From assembly GCF_001194135.2 (NCBI RefSeq), contig NC_069010.1, positions 275,958-317,195 on the forward strand: a stretch of DNA of 41,238 nt. Reading direction: 5' to 3'. The notes beneath the pieces were generated by a model. The model worked only from the letters and a program-made list of their open reading frames with translations. It was not told where the DNA came from and did no database searches. A program made the translations under genes and the position numbers. This document shows, one piece after another, positions 16,191 to 24,814 of this stretch; positions within the stretch are counted from its first letter, which is position 1, and every line of letters starts with the position of its first letter. The stretch is from Octopus bimaculoides (Eukaryota).

Positions 16191-16262
16191 ATATCTTTCC
16201 TACAATCAAATTGAAGACATCGAAGTAGGATCGTTTGCAAATCTCTACAGTTTAGAAAAATT
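16191..16262 (+). CDS. LRR exon L1: YLSYNQIEDIEVGSFANLYSLEK(L)
   Basis: gcag|A...TT|gtaagt, 72 nt, phase 2/2, typical LRR xLxxNxIxxIxxxxFxxLxxLxxL. Confidence 0.95.
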
Positions 16263-16998
16263 GTAAGTTGCCTCTGTTTTCTTCAGACTCTTTCACTCAC
16301 GATATAATTCTCAATGTTTAATATTAAATCATTTGCCGATTTTTCTCATTCACATTAAGACATTATAATCTGCTTTCTTCTTCTTGCTTTTCTTCTATTT
16401 ACTTCTTCTTCTTGTAGTTCCTGATTTTCTCCTTCTTCGTCTTTTTCTTCTCCACCTCCTCCTCCTTCTCTTCCTCGTATTCCTTCTTATTCTTCTTGTT
16501 CTATTCTTCCTCTACTTCTTCTTCTTCTTCTGTTTCTTTGTTTTCTTTTTGTTCTTCACATTCTTCTTTCTTTATCTCTTTCTTCATCCTATTTCTCTTC
16601 CTATCTATCTTCTTCCTGTTCTTCTTCTGTCCTTTTTTCTTCTTCTTCACCTTCTTTTCTTTTCTTCTTCATTTGATATTTATCATATTACTGGTATCAT
16701 TAGCATTATCTTCATTAACATCATCATCGCCATGATTCTCATGATCAGTGCTAGAATTTTACCATCATCAGCATAATCCTCATCATTTTTATCATCATAA
16801 TCGTTATCATCATCATGATCGGCATTTTCATCATCATCATCATCTTCAGCATCTTCATCGTGAAGATAATGATGATTATGATTATTATGCTGATGATCGT
16901 TATCATTATCACTATCATCACCATTACCTGCATCATTTTCATCTAAGGACTCAGCGACCTCATATATTATTTCTAAACATGTCCCTTTTATAATGCAG

Positions 16999-17070
16999 AT
17001 ATCTTAACTGGAATCGAATTAAGGACATCAAAGATGGATCGTTTACAAATCTCTCCAATTTACAAAGATT
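16999..17070 (+). CDS. LRR exon L2: YLNWNRIKDIKDGSFTNLSNLQR(L)
   Basis: gcag|A...TT|gtaagt, 72 nt. Confidence 0.95.
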
Positions 17071-17613
17071 GTAAGTTTCCTCTTCTGCTTTCTTCAGACT
17101 CTTTCACTCACGATATAATTCTCAATGTTTAATATTAAATCATTTGCAGATTTGTACCATTCACATTAGTGAGACATATGTAATCTGCATCCTTCTTGCT
17201 TTCATTCTCCTTATTCTTCATCTTTTACTTCTTTTCTTACACCTCCTCCTCCTCCTTCTCCTCCTCCTCCTCCTCCTCCTCCTCCTACTACTACTCTTGT
17301 TTCTATTCCTTCCTGTTCTTGTTCTAATCATTCTCTTATTTTCTCCATCTTATTCTTCTTCTTCCATCGATTCTCCTTCTTCGTCTTCGTCTTCTTCGTC
17401 TTCTTTTTCGTCTTCTTCTTCATCTTATACTTTATCTTCTTTTTCTTCTTCCTTCGCTTCTCCTCCTCCATTATCATCACCATCTTCATCTTCCTTTCTT
17501 CCTCATCCTCCTAATTATTCTCCATATTCCTCTCACTCTCATCACTCAATATTGAACATTGTATCACGAAACTATTCTATATTATTTATAATCTTCTCCC
17601 TTTTATAATGCAG

Positions 17614-17685
17614 ATATCTTTTTCACAATCAAATTGAAGACATCGAAGATGGATCGTTTGCGAATCTCCCCAACTTAAAAGTATT
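17614..17685 (+). CDS. LRR exon L3: YLFHNQIEDIEDGSFANLPNLKV(L)
   Basis: gcag|A...TT|gtaagt, 72 nt. Confidence 0.95.
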
Positions 17686-19186
17686 GTAAGTTGCCTCTTC
17701 TGTTTTCTTCAGACTCTTTCACTCACGATATAATTCTCAATGTTTAATATTAAATCATTTACCGATTTGTCTCATTCACATTAGTCAGACATATTTAATC
17801 TGCTTTCTTATTGCTTTCATTCTTCTTATTTTTCATATTTTACTTCTTTATTCTTCTTCTTCCCCCTTCCTCCTCGTCCTCCTCCTCGTCCTCCTCCTCC
17901 ACCTCGTCCTCCTCCTCCTCGTCCTCCTCCTCCTCGTCCTCCTCCTCCTCCTCNNNNNNNNNNNNNNNNNNNNNNNNNNNNNNNNNNNNNNNNNNTCTAG
18001 TCCTCTTGCATCAACTTTCTTTCTTTCTTTTTGTTCCCCCTCTTCTTTGTCTTCTTCCTTTTATTCCCCCTGTTGTTCTTGTTCTTCCTCTTCTTCTTTT
18101 TCTCCCACCTATTCATCGCGTTTTCCTTCTTTTTCTTATTCTTTTATTGCTTCTGTTAATTTATAAGTATCATAATTATTATGATCAGCATCATCGTCAT
18201 CATTATCTTCATCATCATGTTTGTTATTTACCATCATCAGCATCATTCTCATAATCATCATATTCATTATTGTCATCATAATTTTCATCGCCTGCGTCAT
18301 CATTATCAACATTATTGTCTTTATCATCTTCTGTATCATCCTGATAATTTGAATTATCATAACCATTATTATCATCATCAACAGCATCTTTATCATCATC
18401 AGCGTCATAATCATCATCATCATCGGCATCATCACCTTTTTCTTCTTCCGTTGTTTCCTCTTATTCATCACGTTCTTCTACTTTTTCTACTTCATCTTCT
18501 TTTATTTCTTCTATTAATTCATAATTATTAGCATTATTATGATCATTATCACCATCATTATCTTCATCATCATCGTCATCATCATTAACACCATCACGAT
18601 ATTCATCATTATTTTCATAATCATCGTCATTATTATCGTCATCATCCACATCATCATTATCACCATCATCATAATCATCATCAAGAGCATCAGCATTTTC
18701 AACACCTGATGATGATGCTAATGATCATGATTATTATCTTTATCATTATCGTCATCATTATCAGCATCATCATCATTAGAATCACCGTTTCCACCATTTT
18801 CATCATAAGCAACACCCTCATTATAATGAACATGGTCATCATCATCAACATCCTCATGATCATAATCATTCTCGACATCAACTACATCTGCATCAAAACC
18901 AGCAATATCATCATCATCATCATCATCACGTTTATCATTGTCCCCATCATCATTATTATCATGATCATCATGATCATCATCATCACACATCAAGATCACC
19001 ATTGTAATCGTCATCGTCACCGTCATCGTGATCAGAATCCCCATTATCATCACCATCTTCATAATCCTTTCTTTCTCATCCTCCTAATTATTCTCCATAT
19101 TCCTCTCACTCTTATCACTCAATATTGAACATTGTATCATGAAACTATTCTATATTATTTCTAATCTTCTCCCTTTTTTAATGCAG

Positions 19187-19258
19187 AAATCTTTACGACA
19201 ATCAAATTAAACACATCAAAGATGGATTGTTTTCAAATCTCTACAATTTAAAAGAATT
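19187..19258 (+). CDS. LRR exon L4: NLYDNQIKHIKDGLFSNLYNLKE(L)
   Basis: gcag|A...TT|gtaagt, 72 nt. Confidence 0.95.
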
Positions 19259-22163: not shown

Positions 22164-23267
22164 GTAAGTTGCCTCTGTTTTCTTCAGACTCTTTCACTCA
22201 GGATATAATTCTCAATGTTTAATATTAAATCATTTGCCGATTTTTCTCATTCACATTAGTGAGACATATTTAATCTGCTTTCTTATTGCTTTCATTCTGC
22301 TAATTCTCCATCTATTTCTTCTTTTTTACTTCCTCTACTTCTCATCCTCCTCTTCTACCCCTCCTTCTCGTCTCCCTAATCCTCCTCTGCCTAATCCTCC
22401 TCCTCCTGTTCCTATTCCTTCTTGTTCTTGTTCCCCTAATCATTTTCTTCTTCTTTCACCAATCCACCTTCTTCCGCTTCTTCGTCTTCTTCTTCATCTT
22501 AAATGTTATCTTTTTTATCTTCTTTTTCTTCTTCCTTCACTTCTTCTTCTTCTTCTTCTCCTCTCTCTCTTTATCTTTTTGTTCTTCCTCTTCTTCTTTG
22601 CCTTCTTCTTCCTCTTCTTTGTCTTCTTCTCCTTGTTGTTGTCCTTCCTCTTCTTTTTCTCCCACCTATTCATCGTGTTTCTCTTCTTCTTCTTCTTCTT
22701 CTCCTTCTTCTTTTATTGCTTCCATTAACTTATAATTATCATTATTATTATTATGACCATCGTCGTCGTCTTCATTATCATCTTCATCATGTTTGTTATC
22801 ACCATCATCAGCATCTTTCTCATCATAATCATTGTCATTATTATGACTAGGGTCATCATTTTCATTATCATCATAATTTTCATCGCCTGCGTCATCATTA
22901 TCAACATTATTGTCTTTATCATCTTCTGCATCATCCTGATAATTTGAATTATCGTAACCATTATTATCATCATCATCAGCATCTTCATCATCATCAGCGG
23001 CATCATCATCATCATCATCTGCATCGTCATCTTTTTCTTCCGTTTTTTCCTCTTATTCATCACGTTCTTCTACTTCATCTTATGATCATTATCATCGTCA
23101 TCATCATCGTGATCAGAATCCTCATTATTATCACCATCTTCATCTTCCTTTCTTCCTCATCCTCCTAATTATTCTCCATATTCCTCTCACTCTTATCACT
23201 CAATATTGAACATTGTATTACGAATCTATTCTATATAATTTCTAATCTTCTCCCTTTTATAATGCAG

Positions 23268-23339
23268 ACGTCTTTACGGCAATCAAATGACGCACATCAA
23301 AGCTGGATGGTTTGAAAATCTCTACAATTTAGAAACATT
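23268..23339 (+). CDS. LRR exon L7: RLYGNQMTHIKAGWFENLYNLET(L)
   Basis: gcag|A...TT|gtaagt, 72 nt. Confidence 0.95.
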
Positions 23340-24297
23340 GTAAGTTGCCTCTTCTGTTTTCTTCAGACTCTTTCATTCACGATATAATTCTCAATGTTTG
23401 ATATTAAATCATTTGCCGATTTTTCTCATTCACATTAGTAACACATATTTAATCTCCTTTCTTCCTCTTACTTCCACTTTCTCTTCTCCTTTTACTTATT
23501 TTTCTTCCACTTTTTTCCTCCTCCCTCCTCCTCCCTCTCCTCCTACTTCCCTACTCCCCCTCATCCACCTTCTCATATTCCGTCTTCTTCTACTAATCTT
23601 TTTTCTTCTGTTTTCTTCTTCCTCATCTTTCATCTCTCCTTCTCCTCCTCCTTTTCTTCATCTTCTTTATTTTGTTTTTCTTCTCGTTCTTCTTTCTTTC
23701 TTTTTCTTCTTCTTCTTTAACTTTTTCTTTCCTTTTTCTTGTTCCCTTTCTTTTCGATTCTTCGTCATTTGATATTTATCAACATATTATGATCATTAGC
23801 TTCATCTTCATTAACTTCATCATCGCCAAGATTGTAATTAACAGTAATAAAATTTCATCATCATCTTTGTCATTATCGTGACCGTTTCGTCATCAATATA
23901 ATCATTATCATTTTCATCATTACGATCTTCATCATCATCATCATCATCAACATTATTTGCATTTTTATTATCATCATCACCACGGTCTTACTCATCTACA
24001 TCAACTTTATCATCGTAATCATCATCGACATCATGAACATAGATTTTGATCGCCAGTATCATCATGATCATCAACGTTAGACTTACTATCATCATGATCG
24101 CGATCGTAATGAACATCATCATCATCATCGTTATAAGCATCCAAATCATAATCATCTTCTTCATATTCCTTTCTTCCTCCTCCTCATCCTAATTATTCTC
24201 TATATTCCTCTCACTGCTAACACTCAATGTTGAATATTGTATCACGAAACCATTATTATATTGTTTTATTTCTAAACTTCTCCCTTTTATAACGCAG

Positions 24298-24369
24298 AAC
24301 TGCTTCCTCGAACAGAATTACGGACATCGAAGATGGATCGTTTACAAATCTCTCCAATTTAAAAGATTT
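24298..24369 (+). CDS. LRR exon L8: TASSNRITDIEDGSFTNLSNLKD(L)
   Basis: gcag|A...TT|gtaagt, 72 nt; the consensus Leu at position 2 is Ala. Confidence 0.9.
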
Positions 24370-24742
24370 GTAAGTTGCCTATGTATTCTTGAGACTCTTT
24401 TAGTTGCGATATAATTCTCAATGTTTAATATTAAATCATTTGCCGATTTTTCTCATTCACGTTAGTAAGAAATATTTAATCTCCTTTCTTCTTCCTTTCA
24501 TTCCTCTTCTTCCTCTACTACTCTTCTTTTTCTTCTCTTCCTCATCCTTCTTCTTTATTCTTCTTTTCTCCGTCTTCTACTACGTCTTCATTTTCTTTTC
24601 CTTCTTGTTTATCTTCTTGTACTGCTTTCCTCTTTTCGTCTCCTTCGTCTCCATATTCCTCTCACTCTTATCACTCAATATTGAACATTGTATCACGAAA
24701 CAATTCTATATTATTTCTAAACTTCTCCCTTTTATAATGCAG

Positions 24743-24814
24743 AAATCTTTACAACAACTCAATTGCCGTCATCAAAGATGGATGGTTTTCAAATCTCTGT
24801 AATTTAAAAACATT
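24743..24814 (+). CDS. LRR exon L9: NLYNNSIAVIKDGWFSNLCNLKT(L)
   Basis: gcag|A...TT|gtaagt, 72 nt. Confidence 0.95.

What the first reader, a model, noticed from the sequence alone, without database searches (positions are those of the whole stretch)
16191..24814. Tandem one-exon-per-repeat LRR cassette array with hypervariable ligand-facing residues and frozen synonymous sites
Seen: nine intact 72-nt exons, all phase 2/2 (junction TT|A = Leu), so any subset or order stays in frame. The codons for I10 (ATC), G13 (GGA), F15 (TTT), N17 (AAT), L18 (CTC) and L21 (TTA) are identical in all nine. The x positions of LxxLxLxxNx vary strongly and non-synonymously: position 1 Y,Y,Y,N,I,E,R,T,N; positions 3-4 SY,NW,FH,YD,SS,FR,YG,SS,YN; positions 22-23 EK,QR,KV,KE,RR,KT,ET,KD,KT. 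Established: these x positions form the concave binding face of LRR solenoids and are the variable sites in lamprey VLR 24-aa cassettes; exon-per-LRR arrays with similar introns are described for Ectocarpus ROCO genes. Inference: a diversifying recognition receptor in a mollusc-like genome, varied by exon shuffling or alternative splicing. NLS and NNS sequons fit an extracellular domain.
Basis: partly seen in the sequence, partly recalled or inferred. Interest (0 to 1): 0.92.

Follow-up and report, generated by a model that had tools for sequence, protein, structure and literature searches.

The report
Young tandem LRR exon array, octopod gene
Nine near-identical 72-base exons, each coding one leucine-rich repeat, sit in an expressed but unannotated octopus-type gene; RNA splices them all together in genomic order, so this is a recently duplicated, fast-evolving binding domain and the RNA gives no sign of a shuffling immune-receptor system.

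Summary
There are nine intact 72-nt exons on the + strand between 16191 and 24814. All are phase 2/2, with AG|exon|GTAAGT borders, and each codes one 24-residue LRR.

RNA contigs from four runs join them in genomic order. An unassembled upstream cassette joins E1, then E1 to E9, then a tenth diverged LRR exon at 31189-31260, then an exon outside the window. Both assembly gaps lie in introns, and the E3>E4 and E5>E6 splices bridge them in frame. No exon-skipping or reordered junction was seen at any boundary examined, and unitig depths along the chain are uniform.

The array grew by tandem duplication of exon-plus-intron units, including a three-unit block (E3-E5 ~ E6-E8). The exons are about twice as diverged as their intron flanks (0.20 vs 0.105, p=6e-5). 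The excess lies in the xxLxLxx codons (0.43) and the other solvent-exposed codons, while framework codons are conserved (0.04). That pattern points to diversifying selection in the germline, possibly together with gene conversion between cassettes.

The closest precedents are the 72-nt phase-2 LRR exons of LH/LGR receptors and of brown-algal ROCO genes. I find no support for alternative splicing or VLR-like assembly. I rate it a new member of a known kind, of moderate interest.

The parts
16191..16262 (+). LRR exon E1 (LYLSYNQIEDIEVGSFANLYSLEK), 72 nt, phase 2/2
   Evidence: RNA contigs match it exactly and join it to an upstream cassette ending ..AAAGTCTT that is not in the window, and to E2.
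16999..17070 (+). LRR exon E2 (LYLNWNRIKDIKDGSFTNLSNLQR)
   Evidence: The E1>E2 and E2>E3 junctions are present in RNA contigs.
17614..17685 (+). LRR exon E3 (LYLFHNQIEDIEDGSFANLPNLKV). The RNA version differs at 4 clustered bases (A16T, P19S, one synonymous).
   Evidence: One contig in X17 carries E2>E3>E4>E5, and the same contig type appears in X25. The variant tract is identical to E2/E8.
19187..19258 (+). LRR exon E4 (LNLYDNQIKHIKDGLFSNLYNLKE)
   Evidence: The E3>E4 splice bridges the gap at 17954-17995.
20567..20638 (+). LRR exon E5 (LILSSNRITDIEDGSFANLYNLRR)
   Evidence: E4>E5 is seen. The end of E5 is the loose end in front of E6.
22092..22163 (+). LRR exon E6 (LELFRNQIKGIRAGWFANLSNLKT)
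   Evidence: The E5>E6 splice bridges the gap at 20793-21223. E6>E7 is also seen. Both are in X25 and X17.
23268..23339 (+). LRR exon E7 (LRLYGNQMTHIKAGWFENLYNLET)
   Evidence: The E6>E7 and E7>E8 junctions are seen.
24298..24369 (+). LRR exon E8 (LTASSNRITDIEDGSFTNLSNLKD)
   Evidence: The E8>E9 joint 24369>24743 (GT..AG) is present in three RNA runs.
24743..24814 (+). LRR exon E9 (LNLYNNSIAVIKDGWFSNLCNLKT)
   Evidence: E9>exon 10 is seen from both sides. The copy in organism B differs by 3 synonymous and 2 non-synonymous changes.
31189..31260 (+). Tenth, diverged LRR exon (LYLRDNRIKNYEDGAFLFLPSITN), same length and phase. It is spliced to an exon outside the window that starts TGACCTCCGTGACAATTACAATATGGCGTG (..I DLRDNYNMA..).
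   Evidence: The next exon is not in the window.
16263..24742 (+). Eight cassette introns (373-1501 nt). About 100 nt at each end is conserved between copies. The interiors are G-poor (CTT)n and (ATC)n low-complexity sequence. Introns 3 and 5 contain the two assembly gaps.
   Evidence: Alignments, divergences, tandem repeats, skew.
17400..24700 (+). Higher-order duplication: block E3-intron-E4-intron-E5 is similar to block E6-intron-E7-intron-E8.
   Evidence: In the block alignment the unique intron parts differ by 2-15% and the exons by 17-24%.
15865..16190 (+). 3' part of a cassette-type intron in front of E1. It runs into the 100-N gap at 15765-15864, so the array continues into unassembled sequence.
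   Evidence: It is 84% identical over 326 nt to the 3' part of intron 1. RNA shows a cassette spliced onto E1.

Best explanation
This is the central part of one expressed, unannotated protein-coding gene of an octopod. The gene encodes an extracellular-type ('typical' class, 24-residue) LRR solenoid. The nine 72-nt exons, an upstream cassette missing from the assembly and the exon at 31189 are constitutive exons. They are spliced in genomic order into a single run of at least 11 LRRs, which probably ends in a cysteine cap. The array arose in the germline by recent tandem duplication of whole exon-plus-intron units. This included a three-unit block duplication, most likely by unequal crossing-over in the repeat-rich introns. 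Every exon is 72 nt and phase 2/2, so any gain or loss keeps the reading frame. After duplication the solvent-exposed residues, above all the xxLxLxx positions of the concave beta-sheet, changed several times faster than the neighbouring introns, while the hydrophobic and Asn framework was held fixed. The result is an elongated, newly shaped, germline-encoded ligand-binding surface. Shown here: the exon structure, the splicing order, expression, the unit and block duplication, and the excess of exon over intron divergence. Inferred: positive selection as the cause of that excess, an extracellular location, and a ligand-recognition role.
For: Structure. LRR identity: Pfam LRR_8 E=2e-83. The nearest solved proteins by sequence are all extracellular LRR ectodomains: LRRC15, IGF acid-labile subunit, LGR4, TLR13, LRRTM, LRIG1, TLR3. 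Splicing: E0>E1; E1>E2 and E2>E3>E4>E5 on one contig; E5>E6>E7; E7>E8>E9>exon 10; exon 10>next exon. Each is seen in 2-4 RNA runs, with one consensus per boundary. Unitig depths in X25 run from 58 to 126 along the chain. Duplication: intron flanks align along about 100 nt on both sides, and the E3-E5 block aligns to E6-E8. Selection: mean pairwise difference is 0.249 in exons against 0.086 and 0.118 in the flanks. In four independent pairs the counts are 58/288 against 82/781, p=6e-5. Concave codons give 26/60 (p=8e-10), other x codons 28/108 (p=3e-5) and framework codons 4/108. By Nei-Gojobori, dN/dS is 2.3 at the concave positions, 0.32 at the framework and 1.05 overall. The intron flanks are not unusually constrained, because they differ by about 3-8% from the related organism B.
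Against: The exons are short (72 nt), so there are few synonymous sites (about 3 in the concave set) and dN/dS on its own is noisy. The conclusion therefore leans on the intron flanks as the neutral yardstick. Gene conversion could have homogenised introns and framework codons, and one converted-looking tract is seen in E3. In that case the array could be older than it looks. For E9, the comparison with organism B gives 3 synonymous and 2 non-synonymous changes, which is no excess at that time scale. The RNA evidence comes from assembled unitigs, which drop rare isoforms. The three raw-read RNA runs have almost no coverage of the exons. The parent gene's other domains are outside the window, so the extracellular and receptor roles are inferred.
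Confidence: 0.68

Rival explanations
1. Concerted evolution rather than youth. The array is older, and repeated gene conversion between cassettes keeps the introns and framework codons alike. Selection rejects conversion tracts that would erase the differences at ligand-facing positions, so diversity is being maintained rather than newly driven.
For: The RNA-derived E3 differs from the window's E3 at four clustered bases, and these make it identical to E2/E8 over that tract. Organism B already has distinct E6-E9 copies, so those cassettes predate the split between the two organisms, yet the paralogous flanks differ by only 9-12% against 3-8% between the organisms. E9 shows 3 synonymous and 2 non-synonymous changes between the organisms.
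Against: The E3 variant is a single case and could be an ordinary allele. The flank similarities follow a clear duplication history: E1/E2 share one type of upstream flank, E3-E9 share another, and the E3-E5 block matches E6-E8. Uniform homogenisation would not leave that pattern. Either way, selection for different x residues is still needed.
Confidence: 0.2
2. One reading: a receptor diversified by alternative splicing or exon choice among interchangeable in-frame cassettes, as in Dscam or brown-algal ROCO genes.
For: All cassettes are 72 nt and phase 2/2, so any subset stays in frame. The splice signals and intron ends are nearly identical. The RNA holds cassette junctions that are not in the window. 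Alternative splicing of such arrays is reported for ROCO genes (PMC11378527).
Against: Every window exon boundary examined shows only the neighbour junction, with a single consensus, in 2-4 runs. Unitig depths are even along the chain. The extra junctions involve cassette sequences that differ from all nine window exons, plus an exon-10-like copy that carries mismatches. They therefore come from unassembled upstream cassettes or a paralogue, not from re-joining of these exons. No docking/selector-type complementary elements were found, only low-complexity inverted repeats.
Confidence: 0.07
3. Relaxed constraint: redundant duplicated repeats drifting neutrally or decaying. The overall dN/dS of about 1 would fit this.
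For: Overall dN/dS is 1.05. E8 has Ala in place of the second framework Leu.
Against: All nine reading frames and all 18 splice sites are intact. Framework codons are more conserved than the introns (4/108 against 82/781). The x codons diverge 2.5-4 times faster than the introns, which neutrality cannot produce. All the exons are in the mRNA.
Confidence: 0.03
4. VLR-like somatic assembly, or an assembly artefact that creates a false array.
For: The 24-residue cassettes with variable concave residues resemble VLR modules. The assembly has gaps and is missing at least one cassette.
Against: The cassettes have canonical splice sites and are joined by splicing in germline order. DNA contigs from other individuals and from a related species reproduce the exon-intron units. 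RNA contigs match eight of the nine exons exactly, and E3 differs at 4 bases.
Confidence: 0.02

Closest known systems
Brown-algal (Ectocarpus, Saccharina) ROCO LRR exon arrays (PMC3341825, PMC11378527)
   Same: One LRR per 72-nt exon in phase 2. Tandem arrays made by exon duplication. Positive selection at concave-face residues.
   Different: Those are cytoplasmic LRR-ROC-COR GTPases with a different LRR consensus (GxxPxxLxxxxxLxxLxLxxNxLx). They also have reverse-strand and inactivated intronic LRR exons and documented alternative splicing. Here no ROC-COR domain is seen, the LRRs are the animal extracellular 'typical' type, there are no reverse-strand or dead cassettes in the window, and splicing is in order.
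Glycoprotein-hormone receptor / LGR gene structure (LH receptor, cited in PMC11378527; LGR4/5 ectodomains)
   Same: An animal extracellular LRR domain in which similar-sized exons each code one LRR and all introns are phase 2. LGR4 is among the best PDB sequence matches (E=3.6e-49).
   Different: In those genes the exons and introns are anciently diverged, with no intron similarity between repeats. No 7TM or hinge exons are visible here, and LRRC15 and IGF-ALS match better than LGR4.
Lamprey/hagfish variable lymphocyte receptors
   Same: 24-residue LRR modules whose variable residues lie on the concave sheet.
   Different: VLR cassettes are non-spliced donor fragments that are copied somatically into an incomplete gene. 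Here the cassettes are ordinary exons of one transcript.
Arthropod Dscam1 tandem exon clusters
   Same: Tandemly duplicated, same-phase, same-size exons that code variants of one structural module.
   Different: Dscam exons are mutually exclusive, with one chosen per cluster. Here all of them are included.
Plant R-gene / RLP LRR domains under diversifying selection at xxLxLxx (own knowledge)
   Same: An excess of non-synonymous change at the solvent-exposed xxLxLxx residues, with repeat-number change by unequal recombination.
   Different: Plant LRRs are usually coded in large exons, not one exon per repeat.

Membership tests
Typical-class LRR domain (Pfam LRR_8 / LRR_1) | Tandem 24-residue repeats with LxxLxLxxNxL(I)xxIxxxxFxxL | tested here: met
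   LRR_8 E=2e-83 in 7 stretches; LRR_4, LRR_1 and other LRR models also match.
Extracellular cysteine-capped LRR proteins (LRRNT/LRRCT) | Cys-rich N- and C-terminal caps, and a signal peptide | tested here: inconclusive
   No cap or signal exon is in the window. The exon after exon 10 begins ..IDLRDNYNMA followed by TG-, which looks like the start of an LRRCT, but only 30 nt were seen. The nearest PDB matches are all ectodomains.
Brown-algal ROCO LRR exon arrays | 72-nt, phase-2, one-LRR exons in tandem | tested here: met
   compared with PMC11378527.
Brown-algal ROCO LRR exon arrays | ROC-COR GTPase domain downstream of the LRRs | tested here: not met
   No such exon is in the window. The LRR type and the probable Cys cap point to an extracellular protein. 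The rest of the gene lies outside the window.
Brown-algal ROCO LRR exon arrays | Alternative splicing that gives different LRR combinations | tested here: not met
   Only in-order junctions appear in four RNA runs. Rare isoforms cannot be excluded from unitigs.
LGR / glycoprotein-hormone receptors | LRR ectodomain followed by a hinge and a rhodopsin-type 7TM | not testable with these tools
   The downstream exons are outside the window. The sequence match to LGR4 is no better than to other LRR ectodomains.
Lamprey VLR system | Cassettes lack splice sites and are copied somatically into an incomplete germline gene | tested here: not met
   All cassettes have AG/GTAAGT borders and are joined by splicing in germline order.
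Dscam-type mutually exclusive exon clusters | One exon per cluster in each mRNA; docking/selector intron pairing | tested here: not met
   Contigs carry consecutive cassettes, for example E2>E3>E4>E5 and E8>E9>exon 10. Only low-complexity inverted repeats were found.

The most novel reading that the evidence does not exclude
The nine exons are the assembled part of a larger cassette family that undergoes gene conversion and may vary in copy number. At least four further cassette types and a second exon-10 copy are expressed but absent from the window. In particular cells or individuals this family would be used combinatorially, by cassette skipping or by allele-specific arrays, giving octopods a diversified LRR recognition repertoire analogous to ROCO or Dscam.
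Probability: 0.07. Interest if true: 0.85.

Novelty: new member of a known kind. Interest (0 to 1): 0.38.

Why it matters
This is a clean animal example of how an LRR binding surface is built. Symmetrical one-repeat exons are duplicated together with their introns, and the ligand-facing residues are then rapidly remodelled. Because the conserved introns are still there, they give an internal neutral yardstick that most LRR genes have lost.

The gene has no counterpart above 45% identity among 5.8 billion database proteins, even though Octopus proteins are in that database. It therefore appears to be missed by current annotation, probably because of its low-complexity introns and the assembly gaps.

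Cephalopod recognition receptors are poorly known, so a fast-evolving, tissue-restricted LRR gene, with at least one paralogue, is a reasonable candidate for immune or chemotactile recognition. It does not point to a new diversification mechanism.

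Tried and rejected
- **Parent gene by homology.** The search returned only generic LRR hits of 45% identity or less, such as Branchiostoma 'slit-like' and 'CPN2-like' proteins. No family could be assigned.
- **Other exons in the window.** I tried tblastn with the hits, a cassette-peptide HMM on the six-frame translation and ORF listing. 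These found only the exon at 31189 and transposon ORFs.
- **Walking along the mRNA by loose ends.** The upstream cassette and the exon after exon 10 are not in the window.
- **Raw-read RNA runs X24, X28 and X29.** Coverage of the exons is almost zero. About 93% of the laid reads are low-complexity cross-matches in the introns, so these runs could not be used to quantify isoforms.
- **Structure prediction of the spliced product.** Mapping of the variable residues therefore rests on the established LRR geometry, not on a model.
- **Rfam.** No match.
- **Inverted-repeat search for docking/selector-like elements.** Only (ATC)n/(GAT)n low-complexity pairs turned up.
- **Literature on cephalopod LRR exon arrays.** Nothing described.
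- **Copy-number or presence/absence polymorphism from DNA unitigs.** The contigs are too short and the depths too uneven to interpret.

Full report
**1. The observation**

The region holds exactly nine copies of a 72-nt unit bounded by ...GCAG| and |GTAAGT, all on the + strand. An nhmmer profile of exon plus flanks finds the same nine and nothing else on either strand.

Every unit begins with the third base of a TT|A leucine codon and ends with TT. All are therefore phase 2/2, and any number of them in any order stays in frame. In that frame each codes a 24-residue repeat of the form L-x-L-x-x-N-x-I-x-x-I-x-x-G-x-F-x-N-L-x-x-L-x-x.

So are the six invariant codons ATC, GGA, TTT, AAT, CTC and TTA. 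There are three NLS sequons and one NNS. Pfam calls the concatenated product LRR_8 with E=2e-83.

**2. The gaps and continuity**

The two gaps flagged by the scan's program (17954-17995 and 20793-21223) lie inside introns 3 and 5. RNA contigs from organism A settle continuity.

- One 222-nt contig in X17, and the same contig type in X25, runs from the end of E2 through E3 and E4 into the start of E5.
- The sequence directly in front of E6 in X25 and X17 is the last 30 nt of E5, and the sequence behind E6 is the start of E7.

The coding sequence is therefore continuous and in frame across both gaps. No additional exon from either gap is included in the mRNA.

**3. How the exons are used**

Joining the junction evidence gives a single chain:

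- an upstream cassette ending ..AAAGTCTT that is not in the window > E1;
- E1>E2;
- E2>E3>E4>E5;
- E5>E6>E7;
- E7>E8, and the joint 24369>24743 (GT..AG) for E8>E9 in three runs;
- E9 > a tenth LRR exon at 31189-31260, 6.4 kb downstream;
- that exon > an exon starting TGACCTCCGTGACAATTACAATATGGCGTG, which reads ..ITN-I-DLRDNYNMA and looks like the start of a C-terminal cysteine cap. It is not in the window.

At each boundary of a window exon there is one consensus, and it is always the neighbouring exon. The unitig depths along the chain in X25 (64, 58, 80, 96, 126, 123, 80, 125) are even. This is what constitutive inclusion looks like.

It is not what alternative cassette choice looks like. 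The caveat is that assembled unitigs suppress rare isoforms, and the three raw-read RNA runs barely express the gene.

Expression is restricted. About six of roughly seventeen RNA runs hold the exon words.

**4. More cassettes exist than the window shows**

The RNA also contains cassette sequences that match none of the nine:

- the E0 end;
- a cassette LNLAGNQITDISDGSFANLYSLTT, flanked by E1-like ends;
- an E7-like cassette beginning AAAACTTAACCGG...;
- an exon-10-like exon (ATATTTGATTCAG.. plus two mismatches) spliced to an E1-like end.

The 326 nt in front of E1 are 84% identical to the 3' part of intron 1 and run straight into a 100-N gap. So the array continues into unassembled sequence, and at least one paralogue or second array exists. 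These extra junctions are new sequences, not re-joined window exons.

**5. How the array arose**

About 100 nt of intron on both sides of every exon aligns between copies.

- E1 and E2 share one type of upstream flank, and E3-E9 share another.
- The stretch E3-intron-E4-intron-E5 aligns as a block with E6-intron-E7-intron-E8, including unique intron segments that differ by only 2-15%.

The array was therefore built by tandem duplication of whole exon-plus-intron units, singly and in a three-unit block. The intron interiors are G-poor (CTT)n and (ATC)n tracts, which are a plausible substrate for unequal crossing-over. That last step is an inference.

**6. Exons are more diverged than their introns**

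Mean pairwise difference is 0.249 in the exons, against 0.086 in the downstream 105 nt and 0.118 in the upstream 95 nt for E3-E9.

Four phylogenetically independent pairs (E1/E2, E3/E6, E4/E7, E5/E8) give these counts, tested against the flanks:

| Site class | Differences | Rate | Fisher p vs flanks |
|---|---|---|---|
| Whole exon | 58/288 | 0.20 | 6e-5 |
| Intron flanks | 82/781 | 0.105 | reference |
| Concave xxLxLxx codons (positions 22, 23, 1, 3, 4) | 26/60 | 0.43 | 8e-10 |
| Other x codons | 28/108 | 0.26 | 3e-5 |
| Framework codons | 4/108 | 0.04 | 0.023, lower than flanks |

Nei-Gojobori estimates over all 36 pairs:

| Site class | dN | dS | dN/dS |
|---|---|---|---|
| Concave positions | 0.93 | 0.41 | 2.3 |
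| Other x positions | 0.42 | 0.50 | 0.84 |
| Framework | 0.042 | 0.13 | 0.32 |
| All codons | 0.32 | 0.31 | 1.05 |

The framework dS of 0.13 equals the intron-flank divergence.

The flanks are not unusually constrained, since they differ by about 3-8% from contigs of a related organism B. The simplest reading is accelerated amino-acid replacement at the solvent-exposed positions of each new repeat, that is, positive or diversifying selection on a germline-encoded binding surface. That the x positions of xxLxLxx line the concave sheet is established LRR structural knowledge. I could not model the protein, because the tool refuses spliced sequences.

**7. What tempers that reading**

The numbers are small, with about three synonymous sites in the concave set.

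The RNA-derived E3 differs from the window's E3 at four clustered bases (A16T, P19S and one synonymous change), and these make it identical to E2/E8 over that tract. This looks like a gene-conversion tract or an allele derived from one. If conversion is frequent, the introns and framework may be kept alike in an older array, while selection preserves the differences at the x positions.

Organism B already has distinct copies of E6-E9. For E9 it shows 3 synonymous and 2 non-synonymous changes (K22Q, T23K), so there is no excess at that time scale, although both replacements fall at x positions. Both versions still require selection for diversity at the ligand-facing residues.

**8. Which genome, which gene**

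A Ty3/gypsy-type integrase in the window (8145-8876) is closest to Octopus bimaculoides (87%), O. sinensis (78-84%) and Argonauta hians proteins.

The same database returned nothing above 45% identity for the 240-residue cassette product. The gene therefore seems to be unannotated.

By sequence the nearest solved structures are extracellular LRR ectodomains: LRRC15, IGF acid-labile subunit, LGR4, TLR13, LRRTM, LRIG1 and TLR3. The non-LRR parts lie outside the window, so the family cannot be decided between LGR-like, Toll-like, LRR-only and the rest.

**9. Comparison with what is known**

One LRR per 72-nt, phase-2 exon is a known architecture.

- It was described for the LH receptor gene, as cited in PMC11378527.
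- It is known, with positive selection at concave residues and alternative splicing, for brown-algal ROCO genes (PMC3341825, PMC11378527).

The present array shares the exon design and the selection signature. It is an animal extracellular-type LRR, it has no ROC-COR domain in view, it has no reverse-strand or dead cassettes, and it is spliced in order.

It fails the defining features of VLRs, whose cassettes are non-spliced and assembled somatically. It also fails those of Dscam clusters, whose exons are mutually exclusive. Searches of the held literature found no description of such an array in cephalopods.

**10. Verdict**

A diversifying LRR recognition domain built by exon duplication: yes. 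Diversity by alternative splicing or shuffling: not supported.
- It is a new member of a known kind and moderately interesting.
- The exotic reading, combinatorial or individual-specific cassette use, remains possible at about 7%. Long-read cDNA and a gap-free assembly would test it.

Noticed in passing
window 5245-9428 (+): A Ty3/gypsy-type LTR-retrotransposon pol region interrupted by two gaps. It has a gag-like ORF, a reverse transcriptase with YLDD, and an integrase. The integrase is closest to Octopus bimaculoides, O. sinensis and Argonauta hians proteins, which identifies the genome as an octopod's.
   Followed up: partly
window 16000-26000 (+): The sense strand of the whole cassette region is strongly G-poor (GC skew -0.4 to -0.67). 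The introns are made of (CTT)n blocks followed by (ATC)n blocks. RNA reads from many other loci cross-match these tracts.
   Followed up: partly
window 17660-17674 (inside E3): The RNA contigs carry an E3 that differs from the assembly at four clustered bases. Over that tract it is identical to E2/E8, so it is either a gene-conversion-like tract or an allele.
   Followed up: partly
not in window (RNA contigs of X25, X17, X16, X18): Expressed cassettes are absent from the window: an E0 end (..AAAGTCTT), LNLAGNQITDISDGSFANLYSLTT, and an E7-like cassette starting AAAACTTAACCGG. There is also a second exon-10-like exon (ATATTTGATTCAG..) joined to an E1-like end. Together they imply unassembled upstream cassettes and a paralogue.
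   Followed up: partly
window 40372-40980 (-), 36689-37042 (-), 28589-28672 (-), 33939-34070 (+): Fragments that look like non-LTR retrotransposon reverse transcriptase, with recurring '..IPVIIGALG..' tails, are scattered downstream of the array.
   Followed up: no
window 37454-38647 (+): A 397-codon ORF split by a gap. It has a CCHC zinc knuckle (CYVCGKRGHMKTKC) and a lysine/glutamate-rich tail, so it is probably a retroelement gag.
   Followed up: no
window 26001-27000: There is a local GC peak (0.46 against about 0.33 around it). Overlapping low-complexity ORFs lie on both strands at 26424-26982. Its nature is unknown.
   Followed up: no
window 24298-24369 (E8): E8 has Ala instead of the second framework Leu (LTASSN), and its acceptor reads aacgcag where the others read aatgcag. 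Organism B has T at 24293. The exon is still spliced normally.
   Followed up: partly
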